Virus record (IMG/VR): IMGVR_UViG_3300031344_000002
Location: 124,001 to 188,000 of that record
Length of the DNA stretch: 64,000 nucleotides
Reading direction: 5' to 3' (one strand)
The notes under the pieces were generated by a model. That model was not told the DNA's origin and made no database searches. It worked only from the letters and a program-made list of their open reading frames with translations. A program made the position numbers and the translations under genes. Shown here in pieces: positions 25,676 through 33,707 of this stretch; position 1 is the stretch's first letter, and each line of letters starts with the position of its first letter.

Positions 25676-26680
25676 ATGAAAAGTTTTACTGAAATTGGTC
25701 AATATCGACAAGTAGTTAGAGAAGTTAAATCACATCATGATTATACTGGTAAAGATGAAAATGGCGATGCCATATATAGTCATACATCTCCATATCCAGT
25801 ATTAACATTTCGTGGTACAGTTAAATTGCATGGAACTAATAGTTCTATTGTTAAATACATTAATGATGGTCAGATTAAATATGATTTTCAAAGTAGAGAA
25901 AGAATAATAGATTTGACCGGAAAAGATGGGGATAATTGTGGTTTCATGAGAGAATTTCAAAAAAAAGATTATCAAAAACTTTTTGATGATATTGATTGTA
26001 AATCATCAATTGCAATTTTTGGCGAATGGTGTGGAAATGGTATTCAAAAGGGCGTTGCAATTGTAGAATTGCCAAAAATGTTTGTAATATTTGCGGTTAA
26101 AATCGATGATGTATATCAAGATATGAATAGCTTCAAACATTTAAAAAATGAAGAACAAAATATTTACAATATTTTACAATTTCCTACATTTTCAATTGAT
26201 ATTGATTTTAACAATCCTGAATTAATTCAAAATAAATTGGTTGAATTAACCACTAATGTTGAAAAAGAATGCCCTGTTGCTAAACAATTTGGTATTACTG
26301 GTATTGGAGAAGGAATTGTTTGGGAACACATCAATGGCAATGAAAGATATATTTTTAAAGTTAAAGGTGAAAAACATCAAAATAGTAAAGTAAAAACTCT
26401 CACAACAGTTAATGTTGAAGAAATTGAAAACATTAAAACATTTGTTGAATATGCAGTAACTGAAAATAGATTATTGCAAGGAATTGATAAAATGAGAGAA
26501 CTTGGTTTACCTATTGAAAGTAAAACCACTGGTGATTATTTAAGATGGGTTTATAATGATGTTATTAAAGAAGAAAGTGATACTATTGCAGAAAATAATA
26601 TTGATGTAAAGAAAATAGGTTCTGCAATTTCAGCAAAAGCCAGAATGTTTTGGTTAAATTATTTAAACACGCATTTATAA
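25676..26680 (+). CDS. RNA ligase, Rnl2 family
   Basis: VKLHGTN, QSR, FGEWCG, GEGIVW, FKVKGEKH. Confidence 0.88.
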   Translation: MKSFTEIGQYRQVVREVKSHHDYTGKDENGDAIYSHTSPYPVLTFRGTVKLHGTNSSIVKYINDGQIKYDFQSRERIIDLTGKDGDNCGFMREFQKKDYQKLFDDIDCKSSIAIFGEWCGNGIQKGVAIVELPKMFVIFAVKIDDVYQDMNSFKHLKNEEQNIYNILQFPTFSIDIDFNNPELIQNKLVELTTNVEKECPVAKQFGITGIGEGIVWEHINGNERYIFKVKGEKHQNSKVKTLTTVNVEEIENIKTFVEYAVTENRLLQGIDKMRELGLPIESKTTGDYLRWVYNDVIKEESDTIAENNIDVKKIGSAISAKARMFWLNYLNTHL

Positions 26681-28732: not shown

Positions 28733-29299
28733 ATGGAAGAAGAAAAAGTATTGGAATATAGAATGTATTTCTTTGTGCCTTATAATGTTAGCGAGATACA
28801 AAAAAGTTTACAAGCCGGGCATTCGGCATTAGAATATGCTCAAAGATATGGTCAATCAGAAGAATTTAAGAATTTTATGAATGATAAAACTTGGATTATC
28901 TTAAATGGCGGTACAACTAATGATGAAAGGGATTTTAATGAAATTGCATTAGGAACTCTAAATCAAATTGCTGATGGTTTATTGGAGAATGATATACAAT
29001 TCTCATATTTTCGTGAACCAGACCTTAATAATGCACTTACTGCAGTTTGTTTCATTTGTGATGAAAGAGTATTTAACGGAAAAGATTATCCAGATTTTGT
29101 GGATTATATTCTTGATATCAAAATGTATACCAAAACAGAAGCAGCAACACCCGCAGAAAATATGATTATGTTAAAAATAAAAACTAATGAAGAATTAATA
29201 ATAATGTTTCCAGAATATTATAAAGAATGGGTGCGCTTTATTGGTGGAATTAAGAATGTATTTCTACGTGAATTAATTAAAGATAAAAAATTAGCATAA
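28733..29299 (+). CDS. peptidyl-tRNA hydrolase Pth2-like protein
   Basis: QAGHSA..., WIILN, FREPDLNNALTAV motifs. Confidence 0.65.
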   Translation: MEEEKVLEYRMYFFVPYNVSEIQKSLQAGHSALEYAQRYGQSEEFKNFMNDKTWIILNGGTTNDERDFNEIALGTLNQIADGLLENDIQFSYFREPDLNNALTAVCFICDERVFNGKDYPDFVDYILDIKMYTKTEAATPAENMIMLKIKTNEELIIMFPEYYKEWVRFIGGIKNVFLRELIKDKKLA

Positions 29300-29336
29300 A
29301 TAACAAATAAAATTAACTTTTAAATAAATTATTAAT

Positions 29337-29744
29337 ATGGAAAAAGAAATAAAGATTAACGTACCAGATGGTTTTGAAATTGATAAAGATAATTCTACTT
29401 TTGAATTAATTAAATTCAAACCTGTTGTAAATAAGGAAGATAAGAATAAATCTATGTCAGATTTCTTATTTCAGATGTTTAATAATGCTGTATGCAAAAT
29501 TACTGGTGAAAAAGAATTAATATATTATAAATTAGATGGATATAATCCAAATTCTGATAATAATAAGTGGTTATTTCAACAGGATTGGAAAAGTGGTAGA
29601 CTTTGGATAAGATATACTTTAATTTGGCAAATTTTCGAAGAAAGATTTGGTCTTAACTACGAGCAAATCAGAGATTTCATTCAAGATTGGGTGGAAACCA
29701 ACCTAAATTGGAAGGGTTTAACACCCCAACGATTCTTGCCATAG
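29337..29744 (+). CDS. array-associated protein A, whose C-terminus is encoded by repeat 1 and spacer 1 of array 1
   Basis: 135 aa ending ...IQDWVETNLNWKGLTP-QRFLP*; paralog of 30748-31161. Confidence 0.8.
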   Translation: MEKEIKINVPDGFEIDKDNSTFELIKFKPVVNKEDKNKSMSDFLFQMFNNAVCKITGEKELIYYKLDGYNPNSDNNKWLFQQDWKSGRLWIRYTLIWQIFEERFGLNYEQIRDFIQDWVETNLNWKGLTPQRFLP

Positions 29745-30055
29745 ACTATTTTTTTGGTGGAAACCAACCTAAATTGGAAGGGTTTAACACCTGTAATTGG
29801 TGTTGAGATAAGTGCCAAAATGGTGGAAACCAACCTAAATTGGAAGGGTTTAACACCTGTAAATGCAATCTTTCTAAAGGAAGTAAAGGTGGAAACCAAC
29901 CTAAATTGGAAGGGTTTAACACCTAAACATCCTTATAGTCATCTTGTGTTCGGGGTGGAAACCAACCTAAATTGGAAGGGTTTAACACCACATAGACATT
30001 GACATAATCTGCGTTATACGGTGGAAACCAACCTAAATTGGAAGGGTTTAACATA
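29690..30055. CRISPR. CRISPR-like array 1: six 36-nt repeats and five 30-nt spacers; no cas genes
   Basis: GGTGGAAACCAACCTAAATTGGAAGGGTTTAACACC at 29690, 29756, 29822, 29888, 29954, 30020 (last ends TA instead of CC); spacers unique. Confidence 0.9.
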
Positions 30056-30111
30056 TTGATTGTAAAAATAATAACAATAATATCAACAACTGAAACTAAA
30101 TTTGAAGAATA

Positions 30112-30711
30112 ATGAATATACGAAAAATTTTAAATTTACCAAATAAAGCTCAAAGAAGATTTATTGAACTTAGTAATGAAATTGTTTTAAATAATTGTGA
30201 AGTTATTGCTCGTGAAGAAATGGAAGAACAGCAAGATAATAAACTTTTTCATGACAGTCGGTGTCCAATATGTAAAAGTAGAAAAGATATTATAAATAAA
30301 ATTGTTAATATTCAAAGTCTTAATCATATTGAAGGTAATTTCAAATTTGGTTTTGGTAAAATAAAAACTGTTATCACAACTAATACTTATAAAGTAAATC
30401 ATTGTAATTCTTGTGGTAATGAATGGGAAATGTATAAAACCAAACCAATTTCACGAACTAATATATTAAATGTTGCTTTTAAATATTTGAAAGAAATATT
30501 GGAAGACCCAGAAAAAAATAAACAAGATTATAAAATGGAAGCCATACAGGTTTTTGAAAATTCATATGCAGAAACATTGTATGAACTTAATGTATGGGTG
30601 AGAACTGATATTAAATTATCTGTTTTAAGAAAACATTATAAATCAGTATATGACAAATATATATTTCCACAAGTTTCTCAATCATTTGTTGATAAATATA
30701 TTAAAGAATGA
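30112..30711 (+). CDS. Zn-ribbon protein between the two array modules
   Basis: CPIC ... HCNSCGNEW. Confidence 0.6.
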   Translation: MNIRKILNLPNKAQRRFIELSNEIVLNNCEVIAREEMEEQQDNKLFHDSRCPICKSRKDIINKIVNIQSLNHIEGNFKFGFGKIKTVITTNTYKVNHCNSCGNEWEMYKTKPISRTNILNVAFKYLKEILEDPEKNKQDYKMEAIQVFENSYAETLYELNVWVRTDIKLSVLRKHYKSVYDKYIFPQVSQSFVDKYIKE

Positions 30712-30747
30712 TAATATTGAAATAATAATATTTAAAAATAATTTTTT

Positions 30748-31161
30748 ATGGAAAATAAAGAAATAAAGATTAACGTACCTGATGGGTTTGAAATTGATAA
30801 AGATAATTCTACTTTTGAATTAATTAAATTCAAACCTGTTGTAAATAAAGAAGATAATAAATCCAAAGAAATGTCGGATTTATTATTCTCAATGTTTAAT
30901 AACACTGTGTGCAAAATTACTGGTGAAAAAGAAATAACTTATTATAAATTAAATGGATATAATCCAAATTCTGATGATAATGAGTGGTTATTTCAACAGG
31001 ATTGGAAAAACGGTAGATTATGGGTAAAATATTCACTTATTTGGAAGGTTTTTGAAGAAAGATTTGGTCTTAACTACGACCAAATCAGAGATTTCATTCA
31101 AGATTGGGTGGAAACCAACCTAAATTGGAAGGGTTTAACACCAATTCAAGGCGGATATTGA
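30748..31161 (+). CDS. array-associated protein B, whose C-terminus is encoded by repeat 1 and spacer 1 of array 2
   Basis: 137 aa ending ...IQDWVETNLNWKGLTP-IQGGY*; paralog of 29337-29744. Confidence 0.8.
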   Translation: MENKEIKINVPDGFEIDKDNSTFELIKFKPVVNKEDNKSKEMSDLLFSMFNNTVCKITGEKEITYYKLNGYNPNSDDNEWLFQQDWKNGRLWVKYSLIWKVFEERFGLNYDQIRDFIQDWVETNLNWKGLTPIQGGY

Positions 31162-31340
31162 CGACAGCAAAAGGTGGAAACCAACCTAAATTGGAAGGGT
31201 TTAACACCGTTGCCAGTAATGCCCTTGCGGAACTATATGGTGGAAACCAACCTAAATTGGAAGGGTTTAACACCAGAAAAGGATAACTGGTTTTCCTATT
31301 GTTTGGTGGAAACCAACCTAAATTGGAAGGGTTTAACACC
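31107..31340. CRISPR. CRISPR-like array 2: four 36-nt repeats and three 30-nt spacers
   Basis: same repeat at 31107, 31173, 31239, 31305; no spacer shared with array 1. Confidence 0.9.
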
Positions 31341-31554
31341 AGATAAATAAATTAATAAGAAAAAATTATGAATAAAATTATATTAAAAATAATTGATAAA
31401 AAAATAGTTGAAAAGGATTTCAGTTTGATAACTAAAAAGTTTGAAACTATTGAAGAACAAATTATAGAAACGAAAAAAATGTATGAATTTGAGAATGATA
31501 AAATTCAAATGAATAAAATTATTAAACAAATAAAAAAAATATAAAATTAAAACT

Positions 31555-33113: not shown

Positions 33114-33707
33114 ATGGAAATAAAAAAATTTAATAATAGACCAAATGACCATATTATGTATGGTTTTGATTCTCAATCATCAGATGTTAAAATAAGACAG
33201 GATTATTGGATAAGCAGGTCTGTTACTACAGTTGGTATTGTATTTGTAATTCCTTCATTTAGTGATATGCAGATTCTTATTACTCAAAGGTCAAATAAAA
33301 TGCGTGACGAAAAAAATAAATATTGTTTACCTTGTGGTTACGTTGATTGGAATGAAACAATTTTTGAATCAATGATAAGAGAAGTTTACGAAGAAACTAG
33401 TTTATATCTTCCAGATTATAAAGATTTGTTAATTACAAATTATAATGAAAAACCAATAGAAATTAGGGATAATCCGGGTAATCATCTTCAAAATATATCA
33501 TTTATATATCTTTCAGTATATGATTTTACTAAAAATAATGAACGTTTTCCAATTGAAATTGAAAAATATTCAGATAAAGAAACAAAATTAGTTAAATGGA
33601 TATCACTTAATAATTTTTATAATAGTTATGATAAAGAACTTAATTGGGCTTTTGGTCATAACGAAACAATAAAAAGAGCAATTGAATTTTATAAAATAAA
33701 TGAATAA
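33114..33707 (+). CDS. NUDIX hydrolase
   Basis: GYVDWNETIFESMIREVYEETSL Nudix box; WAFGH. Confidence 0.85.
   Translation: MEIKKFNNRPNDHIMYGFDSQSSDVKIRQDYWISRSVTTVGIVFVIPSFSDMQILITQRSNKMRDEKNKYCLPCGYVDWNETIFESMIREVYEETSLYLPDYKDLLITNYNEKPIEIRDNPGNHLQNISFIYLSVYDFTKNNERFPIEIEKYSDKETKLVKWISLNNFYNSYDKELNWAFGHNETIKRAIEFYKINE

What the first reader, a model, noticed from the sequence alone, without database searches (positions are those of the whole stretch)
29726..31172. Both genes stop at the same position in different first spacers; the 66-nt unit keeps every spacer in frame as an alternative C-terminus
Seen: gene A stops at spacer-1 nt 17-19 (TAG 29742-29744) and gene B at spacer-1 nt 17-19 (TGA 31159-31161), although the spacers are unrelated. 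Both proteins therefore end LTP plus five residues (QRFLP, IQGGY). The unit is 66 nt (22 codons) and the repeat is stop-free in the gene frame. Five of the six later spacers are open in that frame (VIGVEISAKM, VNAIFLKEVK, KHPYSHLVFG, LPVMPLRNYM, EKDNWFSYCL); one stops early (HRH*). Inference: any acquisition or repeat-repeat recombination rewrites the protein tail, so there may be selection for a short tail, or the array may act as a tail-diversifying cassette library or a feedback switch. With n=2, coincidence is possible.
Basis: partly seen in the sequence, partly recalled or inferred. Interest (0 to 1): 0.7.

Follow-up and report, generated by a model that had tools for sequence, protein, structure and literature searches.

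The report
Phage gene ending in CRISPR repeat
In this giant phage, two copies of a small conserved gene each end in the first repeat of a short CRISPR array, so the protein runs into whichever spacer comes first; the two genes stopping at the same spacer position is chance, but the gene-repeat overlap is shared by a large phage protein family and I found no description of it.

Summary
Gene A (29337-29744) and gene B (30748-31161) are paralogs. Their last 12 conserved codons are repeat 1 of two arrays with 36-nt repeats and 30-nt spacers, and both stop at spacer nt 17-19.

The shared stop is chance (null 0.02-0.03):
- A third paralog in the same 218-kb phage genome reads through spacer 1 and has a 35-aa tail.
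- A 99.5% identical strain lacks spacers B1 and B2, giving gene B a 24-aa tail.
- Among 184 family proteins, tails run from 1 to over 40 aa.
- Relatives have 29-, 31- and 32-nt spacers that break the frame.
- The gene frame is no more open than the other frames.

These are real CRISPR mini-arrays:
- Every spacer is unique.
- The last repeat is degenerate.
- Spacers are gained at the gene end.
- Two spacers match foreign DNA from the same habitat.

The gene is a real protein gene (dN/dS 0.2). It belongs to a family of at least 753 clusters in which the gene's 3' end is repeat 1.

No cas gene was found here. A complete relative carries Cas12f beside an array whose repeat is 67% identical.

The tails are by-products. 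The protein-coding leader and first repeat look like a new variant of phage-borne CRISPR.

The parts
29337..29744 (+). Gene A, 135 aa. Member of an uncharacterised phage protein family. Its conserved C-terminus WVETNLNWKGLTP is followed by a 5-aa read-through tail (QRFLP) and TAG.
   Evidence: ORF list and translation. 46 close homologs and 753 clusters at 50% identity. dN/dS 0.20-0.23 against paralogs B and C. No Pfam or PHROG family.
29690..29725 (+). Repeat 1 of array A. It is also the last 12 conserved codons of gene A, so this stretch is both coding sequence and CRISPR repeat.
   Evidence: Exact repeat match. Reading frame. Alignment of first repeats from 20 loci shows mostly synonymous change plus invariant ends.
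29690..30055 (+). CRISPR mini-array A: 6 repeats of 36 nt and 5 unique 30-nt spacers (29726-29755, 29792-29821, 29858-29887, 29924-29953, 29990-30019). The last repeat (30020-30055) is degenerate at its 3' end, which marks the trailer end.
   Evidence: Spacers 1 and 2 are found inside unrelated DNA in contigs from the same habitat. The array is identical in a 99.5% identical strain.
30112..30711 (+). Unrelated 199-aa ORF with CxxC pairs, lying between the two modules. It is not part of the module.
   Evidence: Only weak family hits. Neighbouring genes differ between modules and between phages.
30748..31161 (+). Gene B, 137 aa, paralog of gene A (about 89% nt identity). Same conserved C-terminus, then tail IQGGY and TGA.
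31107..31342 (+). CRISPR mini-array B: 4 repeats and 3 unique 30-nt spacers (31143-31172, 31209-31238, 31275-31304). Repeat 1 (31107-31142) is the 3' end of gene B. The codons DK and a stop follow the last repeat.
   Evidence: A near-identical strain has only the third spacer, so the two gene-proximal spacers are the variable ones. 'DK then stop' after the last repeat recurs in relatives.
29630..29688 (+). Predicted hairpin within the coding region just upstream of repeat 1. The equivalent in gene B is about 31050-31103. Its meaning is unknown.
   Evidence: strand folding z-scores -2.4 and -3.2. Repeat 1 keeps its own internal fold and does not pair with the upstream sequence.

Best explanation
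The region holds two of the three 'gene plus CRISPR mini-array' modules of a jumbo phage (IMG/VR record of 218 kb, 26% GC, from rhizosphere/peat metagenomes).

Shown:
- Each module starts with a real protein gene of about 130 aa under purifying selection.
- The last 36 nt of its conserved coding sequence are the first repeat of an array (36-nt repeats, 29-32-nt unique spacers).
- Gene and array lie on the same strand.
- The distal repeat is degenerate (array A; array B's last repeat is intact), and strains differ at the gene-proximal end. That is the polarity of a CRISPR array whose leader is the gene.
- The ORF therefore runs past ...GLTP into whichever spacer lies first and ends at the first chance stop.
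- The equal stop position of genes A and B is coincidence, and the 66-nt unit is simply 36 + 30.

Inferred:
- Each spacer integration duplicates the gene's own last 36 nt, as CRISPR integration duplicates the first repeat. This would explain why the repeat co-varies with the protein C-terminus across the family.
- The array is co-transcribed with the gene, and the crRNAs guide a Cas effector against competing mobile elements.
- The effector is unidentified. The best lead is a Cas12f-type (type V-F) nuclease: a complete 365-kb relative encodes Cas12f beside a canonical array whose repeat is 24/36 identical to the gene-embedded repeat.
- The integrase must come from the host or be unknown, because neither phage has Cas1.
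For: - Repeats, spacers and frames.
- Third module, with read-through and 31-nt spacers.
- Real gene: dN/dS 0.20-0.23 with dS 0.32-0.38; 46 homologs; 753 clusters at E<=1e-3.
- Family-wide overlap: at least 43 of 184 proteins read into a second in-frame copy of their own last 12 aa after about 10 variable residues. This was confirmed on DNA in diverged lineages with different repeats: L016, L017, L019, L036, L038, L040, L042, L051, L054, L057, L058.
- Repeat under two constraints: third codon positions vary most, yet the ends (GAA near the 5' end, ACACC at the 3' end) are invariant at synonymous sites.
- Polarity and turnover: degenerate distal repeats; spacers B1 and B2 absent from a 99.5% identical strain.
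- Foreign origin of spacers: A1 and A2 lie inside unrelated flanks in contigs of five runs from the habitat.
- Scattered tail lengths.
- Frame test.
- Cas12f lead; repeat similarity reached by 0 of 100,000 shuffles.
- No Cas1.
Against: - No cas gene was recognised in the 218 kb held, which CheckV rates 66% complete. The only RuvC-type protein is an IS-type TnpB with no array beside it.
- No host genome among 185,579 species carries the repeat.
- No spacer target was identified by name.
- No anti-repeat or tracrRNA was found.
- The two protospacers have a 3' GG flank, not the 5' T-rich PAM expected of Cas12f.
- Transcription and processing are not shown. The one RNA run holds only contigs of a related strain.
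- Tails of 0-2 aa are rarer than a geometric null predicts (5 against about 35 of 184), so some constraint just after ...TP cannot be excluded.
Confidence: 0.8

Rival explanations
1. Tail-diversifying cassette library: the array stores in-frame alternative C-termini that repeat-repeat recombination or acquisition swaps onto the protein for a functional purpose.
For: In the window all eight spacers are 30 nt, so the frame is kept. Five of six later spacers are open. Among later spacers of all loci the gene frame is the most often open, 16/22 against 11/22 and 9/22. Tails really do change between strains.
Against: - The third array of the same genome has 31-nt spacers that break the frame.
- Relatives have 29- and 32-nt spacers.
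- Over all 37 spacers the gene frame (26) is not more open than frame +1 (25).
- Spacers are pieces of foreign DNA.
- Tails share no sequence or length.
Confidence: 0.03
2. Selection for a short tail, or a feedback switch: the protein tolerates only a few extra residues, or processing at repeat 1 regulates the protein.
For: Both genes in the window have 5-aa tails. [quoted passage not shown]
Against: Gene C has a 35-aa tail. Gene B has a 24-aa tail in a 99.5% identical strain. 109 of 184 family proteins have tails of 10 aa or more, and very short tails are depleted, not enriched. Nothing here shows processing.
Confidence: 0.05
3. RNA decoy (Racr-like): the repeats mimic a host CRISPR repeat and soak up host Cas proteins, and the spacers are incidental.
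For: Some family members carry only the solitary gene-end repeat with no array (L039, L041, L044). Single repeat units acting as RNA anti-CRISPRs are known in viruses (PMC11656645). No effector was found in this phage.
Against: Most loci examined have arrays with unique spacers, gene-proximal gain and habitat protospacers. No host array with this repeat was found. The repeat diverges along with the phage protein, which does not suit mimicry of one host's repeat.
Confidence: 0.08
4. Accidental neo-CRISPR: a host Cas1-Cas2 integrates spacers off-target into a gene end that happens to resemble a leader-repeat junction. The arrays have no function for the phage.
For: No Cas1 in G000 or in the complete relative G001. 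The repeat is simply the gene's own last 36 nt in every lineage. Arrays are short.
Against: The overlap is kept across a very large and old family. Synonymous sites at the repeat ends are invariant, which points to selection on the DNA or RNA. Modules are multiplied within genomes, 3 in G000 and tandem in L054. A related canonical array sits beside a phage Cas12f.
Confidence: 0.12
5. Not CRISPR at all: a tandem-repeat protein with variable linkers, or an assembly artefact.
For: Gene callers extend ORFs through the repeats.
Against: There are in-frame stops inside the spacers and frame-breaking spacer lengths. The same arrays were assembled independently in several samples and collections. One strain differs by exactly two 66-nt units. 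Foreign protospacers exist.
Confidence: 0.01

Closest known systems
Virus-borne CRISPR mini-arrays and compact orphan arrays of huge phages (reviewed in PMC11656645; Al-Shayeb et al. 2020, PMC7162821)
   Same: Short arrays on a phage genome without an adaptation module and without an adjacent effector, presumably used against competing elements. Al-Shayeb et al. report compact arrays (median six repeats) and systems lacking Cas1, Cas2 and Cas4 in huge phages.
   Different: Here repeat 1 lies inside the conserved 3' end of a protein gene, in a family of at least 753 clusters, and the repeat diverges together with that protein. Known mini-arrays have repeats identical to the host's, and no host match was found. 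Neither paper, nor six text searches, mentions repeats inside ORFs.
Type V-F (Cas12f / Cas14) CRISPR systems of huge phages
   Same: A complete relative (G001, 364,702 nt) has a 482-aa Cas12f (PADLOC 3e-82; PDB 9nzr 6e-48) followed by an array with 36-nt repeats and 29-30-nt spacers. That repeat is 24/36 identical to the gene-embedded repeat.
   Different: The window's genome has no Cas12f beside an array, only an IS-type TnpB. No tracrRNA or anti-repeat was found. The two protospacers lack a 5' T-rich flank.
Type VI-B (Cas13b) arrays
   Same: 36-nt repeat, 30-nt spacers and 4-nt complementary repeat ends, as described by Smargon et al. (bioRxiv 10.1101/092577). The repeat folds into a terminal stem.
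   Different: The ends are GGUG/CACC, not GUUG/CAAC. There is no poly-U loop. The fold is not kept in relatives. No cas13b was seen. There is no leader-repeat hairpin of the kind reported for VI-B (PMC13187072).
TnpB omega-RNA overlapping the 3' end of tnpB (from my own knowledge of IS200/IS605 elements)
   Same: A guide-RNA scaffold encoded within the 3' end of a protein-coding gene, so one stretch serves both protein and RNA.
   Different: The protein here is not a nuclease and has no RuvC domain. The RNA part is a spacer-acquiring repeat array, not a fixed transposon end. This is an analogy only and was not tested.
Off-target ('neo-CRISPR') spacer integration by Cas1-Cas2 (from my own knowledge; not retrieved here)
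   Same: Integration duplicates whatever sequence lies at the target site, which would make a gene's last 36 nt into a repeat.
   Different: Here the site is conserved in a large gene family, the arrays are polar and multiplied, and synonymous sites at the repeat ends are fixed. That suggests a selected arrangement, not an accident.

Membership tests
CRISPR array (generic) | Near-identical direct repeats of 23-47 nt separated by unique spacers of similar length | tested here: met
   Ten exact 34-36-nt copies in the window, none in 100 shuffles. Eight unique 30-nt spacers.
CRISPR array (generic) | Polarity: degenerate trailer repeat, and new spacers at the leader end | tested here: met
   The last repeat of array A is degenerate, as are the distal repeats of L017, L042, L051 and L054. 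A 99.5% identical strain lacks only the two gene-proximal spacers of array B.
CRISPR array (generic) | Spacers derive from foreign nucleic acid | tested here: met
   Spacers A1 and A2 lie inside unrelated flanking sequence in contigs of runs X1, X3, X5, X6 and X8 from the same habitat. The other spacers have no match.
CRISPR array (generic) | Associated cas genes in the locus or genome | tested here: not met
   No Cas among the 19 largest ORFs. No Cas1. Only an IS-type TnpB at genome 214,945-216,183. The genome is 66% complete, so this is not final.
Type V-F (Cas12f) array | Cas12f effector next to the array | tested here: not met
   Absent beside arrays A, B and C. Present in relative G001, but 13 kb from its gene-linked arrays and beside a different, related array.
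Type V-F (Cas12f) array | Repeat related to a repeat known to serve a Cas12f | tested here: met
   24/36 ungapped identity to the array adjacent to Cas12f in G001. None of 100,000 shuffles reached this.
Type V-F (Cas12f) array | tracrRNA with an anti-repeat | tested here: inconclusive
   No complementarity beyond shuffled controls near the G001 cas12f gene. An 11-nt match was found in G000 near the TnpB gene, and the genome-wide duplex scan gave no usable result.
Type V-F (Cas12f) array | 5' T-rich PAM beside protospacers | tested here: not met
   The two protospacers have 5' flanks ending ...GACT and ...GCTC, and both have a 3' GG. n = 2.
Type VI-B (Cas13b) array | 36-nt repeat and 30-nt spacers | tested here: met
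   criteria from bioRxiv 10.1101/092577.
Type VI-B (Cas13b) array | 5'-GUUG and CAAC-3' repeat ends, and a poly-U loop | tested here: not met
   The ends are GGUG/CACC (GGUA in many relatives). The loop reads UAAAUU. The fold is not conserved.
Type VI-B (Cas13b) array | cas13b (two HEPN motifs) in the genome | tested here: not met
   No PADLOC Cas13 hit in the large ORFs of G000. No ORF of at least 400 aa in the complete G001 has two RxxxxH motifs (a crude test).
Viral mini-array that uses the host's system | Repeat identical or nearly identical to the host's CRISPR repeat | tested here: not met
   The 3' 20-mer of the repeat has one isolated hit in 185,579 species genomes, in a Peribacteria MAG and not in an array. 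The host is unknown, so absence from the collection is weak evidence.
Viral mini-array that uses the host's system | Spacers target related viruses | tested here: inconclusive
   No spacer matches G000, G001 or any held locus. The flanks of the A1 target are AT-rich and phage-like, but the target is unidentified.
RNA anti-CRISPR (single repeat unit) | A solitary repeat with no spacers | tested here: not met
   The window's modules have 5 and 3 spacers. Solitary gene-end repeats do exist in relatives L039, L041 and L044.

The most novel reading that the evidence does not exclude
A large, old family of small phage proteins (at least 753 clusters at 50% identity) has a 3' coding end that is itself the founding repeat and leader junction of CRISPR arrays. 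In this reading the gene is a dedicated, protein-coding seed for arrays, and the overlap is functional: co-transcription of the gene and the pre-crRNA, and possibly the protein acting on its own gene end or transcript. That would let jumbo phages grow and use guide arrays without carrying cas1 or cas2.
Probability: 0.3. Interest if true: 0.8.

Novelty: new variant of a known kind. Interest (0 to 1): 0.6.

Why it matters

What lies under it could matter. CRISPR leaders and repeats are taken to be non-coding. Here the leader is a conserved gene, and the first repeat is under both protein and nucleic-acid constraint across hundreds of phage lineages.

If the arrangement is functional, it would show a new way for phages to own and extend guide arrays. 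It would give a sequence signature (family gene end = repeat 1) for finding orphan phage arrays that array finders and gene callers both misread. It would also offer a natural case for studying how spacer integration picks its site, and how translation and crRNA production share one transcript.

There is a practical point too: many database proteins of this family carry meaningless C-terminal extensions translated from spacers and repeats.

Tried and rejected
- **Alternative genetic code** (TAG read through in gene A): rejected. Under code 11, ORFs of at least 100 aa already cover 206 kb of the 218 kb, and opening TAG adds little.
- **Rfam:** no family at gathering score over the whole window. 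Only chance-level hits on the array. No omega-RNA family near the TnpB gene.
- **tRNAs:** none in the window.
- **Function of the gene A protein:**
  - No Pfam or PHROG family.
  - AlphaFold model with pLDDT 82.
  - No significant match in PDB by Foldseek or by VIA-align, best Z 4.4, which is noise level.
  - In AlphaFold DB clusters, only uncharacterised proteins matched.
- **Longer family members:** Pfam on the fused members gave no informative partner domain.
- **Host search** by repeat: one chance hit.
- **Spacer targets:**
  - Nothing in the phage collection.
  - Nothing in IMG/VR for A1, A2 or B2.
  - No self-targeting and no cross-targeting among held genomes.
- **Read-level first-spacer turnover:** the runs are kept as short assembler contigs that break at the repeats, so they could not show array variants. 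Strain contigs answered the question instead.
- **Collecting distant loci with the search for related loci:** the alignments were too diverse.
- **Leader-repeat hairpin** of the type VI-B kind: not present.
- **tracrRNA / anti-repeat search:** nothing above shuffled controls.
- **Published Cas13b repeat** for a direct comparison: none found in the text library.
- **Promoter and terminator scan:** uninformative in 26% GC DNA.
- **Canonical G001 repeat:** found in no other IMG/VR contig.
Full report
**1. What is in the window**

The window is bases 124,001-188,000 of a single 218,381-nt IMG/VR virus record (26% GC, CheckV completeness 66%). The genome has a tail sheath, a family B DNA polymerase and an SbcCD-like fusion, which fits a jumbo myovirus-like phage. 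Public runs that hold the region are rhizosphere and peat metagenomes. The standard code fits: ORFs of at least 100 aa cover 206 kb, and opening TAG adds little.

**2. The observation**

A 36-nt repeat (window:29690-29725) occurs six times in array A and four times in array B, always 66 nt apart. No shuffle of the window gave a match.

- Gene A (29337-29744) and gene B (30748-31161) are paralogs.
- Both run through repeat 1, which encodes VETNLNWKGLTP after a Trp, and both stop at nt 17-19 of spacer 1 (TAG 29742-29744; TGA 31159-31161).
- The tails are QRFLP and IQGGY.
- Five of the six later spacers are open in that frame.

**3. Is the coincidence meaningful? No.**

- The chance of two first spacers stopping at the same in-spacer codon is 0.02 from shuffles of the two spacers. 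It is 0.027 from the stop density of this genome's spacers.
- The same genome has a third module on the minus strand at genome 3625-2902. Its spacer 1 is open, and its spacers are 30, 31, 31, 30 and 30 nt. The ORF reads through repeat 2, shifts frame after the 31-nt spacer and stops in repeat 3, giving a 35-aa tail.
- A strain 99.5-99.9% identical to the window (L060, L059) has array A unchanged but array B with only its third spacer. Gene B there carries a 24-aa tail.
- In 46 close homologs, tails range from 2 to 50 aa. In 184 family proteins with a defined end they range from 1 to over 40 aa, and only five have a 5-aa tail.
- Peaks at 14 and 26 aa come from reading into the next repeat, out of frame or in frame.
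- Over 37 spacers from 16 arrays, 26 are open in the gene frame, 25 in frame +1 and 19 in frame +2. All frames are more open than mononucleotide shuffles, as expected for pieces of real genes.
- Relatives L057 and L058 have 29-nt spacers (65-nt period), and L016 has a 32-nt first spacer. The 22-codon unit is therefore not a family property.

**4. These are CRISPR arrays**

- The spacers are unique and have no copy elsewhere in the genome.
- The distal repeat is degenerate in array A and in several relatives.
- The only difference between near-identical strains is two whole units at the gene-proximal end.
- Spacers A1 and A2 occur, with unrelated flanks, in contigs of five runs from the habitat, so their sources coexist with the phage. 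Both protospacers are followed by GG (n = 2).

**5. The gene is real and the overlap is family-wide**

- Among paralogs A, B and C, dS is 0.32-0.38 and dN/dS is 0.20-0.23.
- A profile of the 46 homologs finds 753 clusters at 50% identity with E<=1e-3, and 126 with E<=1e-10. Most are proteins of 110-140 aa.
- Their C-termini share a pattern of roughly ...IQxFIxxxVExxLxxxGxTP.
- At least 43 of the 184 read into a second in-frame copy of their own last 12 residues after about ten variable residues, even where those residues differ completely from the window's motif.
- This was checked on DNA in lineages with 21-37% GC: L051, L054 (a 551-kb scaffold with tandem modules), L057 and L058. In each, the repeat is that gene's own last 36 nt.
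- A few members have only the solitary gene-end repeat (L039, L041, L044).
- In an alignment of 20 first repeats, third codon positions are the least conserved (1.11 bits against 1.25 and 1.40). However, the third positions of the Glu and Thr codons and the terminal CACC never change. This indicates protein constraint plus a nucleic-acid constraint at the repeat ends.
- I infer that integration copies the gene's last 36 nt each time, so the array follows the gene.

**6. Which machinery?**

This remains open.

- No Cas was recognised among the 19 largest ORFs of the genome.
- There is no Cas1.
- No host array with the repeat exists in 185,579 species genomes.
- The repeat has the size and end-pairing of a type VI-B repeat. 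It lacks the GUUG/CAAC ends and the poly-U loop, and it shows no leader-repeat hairpin.
- The best lead comes from G001, a complete 364,702-nt relative with terminal repeats and two family modules.
  - It has a 482-aa Cas12f: PADLOC Cas12u3/Cas12f 3e-82, PDB 9nzr 6e-48, Pfam Cas12f1-like TNB.
  - This gene is followed by a canonical array with 36-nt repeats and 29-30-nt spacers.
  - That repeat is 24/36 identical to the gene-embedded repeats, and none of 100,000 shuffles reached this.
  - G001 has no Cas1.
- G000 and G003 have only an IS-type TnpB with no array beside it.
- No anti-repeat was found.
- The two protospacer flanks do not look like a Cas12f PAM.
- I therefore put the type V-F link at roughly 0.35-0.4.

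**7. The protein**

There is no Pfam or PHROG family. The AlphaFold model (pLDDT 82) has a four-stranded sheet and three helices. It has no significant structural match. The function is unknown.

**8. Known or new**

Compact orphan arrays on huge phages, and viral mini-arrays, are known. I found no description of a repeat embedded in a conserved ORF family. That search covers only the held library.

I rate this a new variant of a known kind. The flagged stop coincidence itself is ordinary.

Noticed in passing
outside the window: genome G000:C1:2902-3625, minus strand (locus L001): Third gene-array module. Its repeats differ from those of A and B at two sites, both synonymous in the gene frame, except repeat 5, which is the A/B type. 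That suggests exchange between arrays.
   Followed up: yes
window 29295-30109 and 29299 onward: Some strains in the habitat lack the whole gene A + array A module. A contig in run X8 joins 29295 to 30109, and contigs in X4, X5 and X7 continue with other sequence after 29299. The module is therefore an insertion/deletion unit.
   Followed up: partly
window 29726-29757 and 29791-29825: Both habitat protospacers (for spacers A1 and A2) are followed by GG (GGTG for A2), the same bases that begin the repeat. This may be an acquisition motif or a shifted repeat boundary. n = 2.
   Followed up: partly
window 29630-29688 and 31050-31103: Predicted stable hairpins inside the coding sequence directly upstream of repeat 1 (z -2.4 and -3.2).
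   Followed up: partly
relative G001 (IMGVR_UViG_3300044712_001937), 217,417-219,451; loci L071, L083: Compact type V-F system on a complete 365-kb phage: a 482-aa Cas12f followed by a 6-repeat array that abuts a tRNA cluster. No cas1 in the genome.
   Followed up: yes
outside the window: G000:C1:214,945-216,183 (L080:2946-4184): IS200/IS605-type TnpB of 412 aa, 51% identical to one on another family-bearing phage fragment (G003). No array and no Rfam omega-RNA family beside it.
   Followed up: partly
outside the window: G000:C1:217,813-218,381 (L080:5813-6382): The contig ends in a tandem repeat that is open in several frames (repeating NTL-type peptide units). This may explain why the assembly stops there.
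   Followed up: no
L054:10001-11228 (551-kb scaffold, 21% GC): Family genes in tandem. The degenerate last repeat of each mini-array supplies the ATG of the next family gene. A long run of small LRR-protein genes lies downstream.
   Followed up: partly
family proteins: Tails of 0-2 residues after ...TP are rare: 5 of 184 against about 35 expected. This could be a bias from cluster representatives being the longest member, or a real constraint.
   Followed up: partly
L040:2549-2571: Spacer 2 of the L040 array has a 22/23 match to its own contig about 700 nt upstream of the family gene.
   Followed up: no
L015 (crAss-like phage cr116_1, MT774389.1:9303-9407): A 105-nt stretch 76% identical to the 5' part of genes A and B lies in an unannotated gap of a human-gut crAss-like phage. 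The N-terminal module of the family may be shared more widely.
   Followed up: no
L010:5145-5166 (Peribacteria MAG contig): An isolated 22-nt exact match to the 3' part of the repeat, in an intergenic stretch with no array. Probably chance.
   Followed up: partly
window 25676-26680 and 33114-33707: The neighbouring genes include an RNA ligase and a NUDIX hydrolase, from Pfam labels on the near-identical strain contig L060.
   Followed up: no
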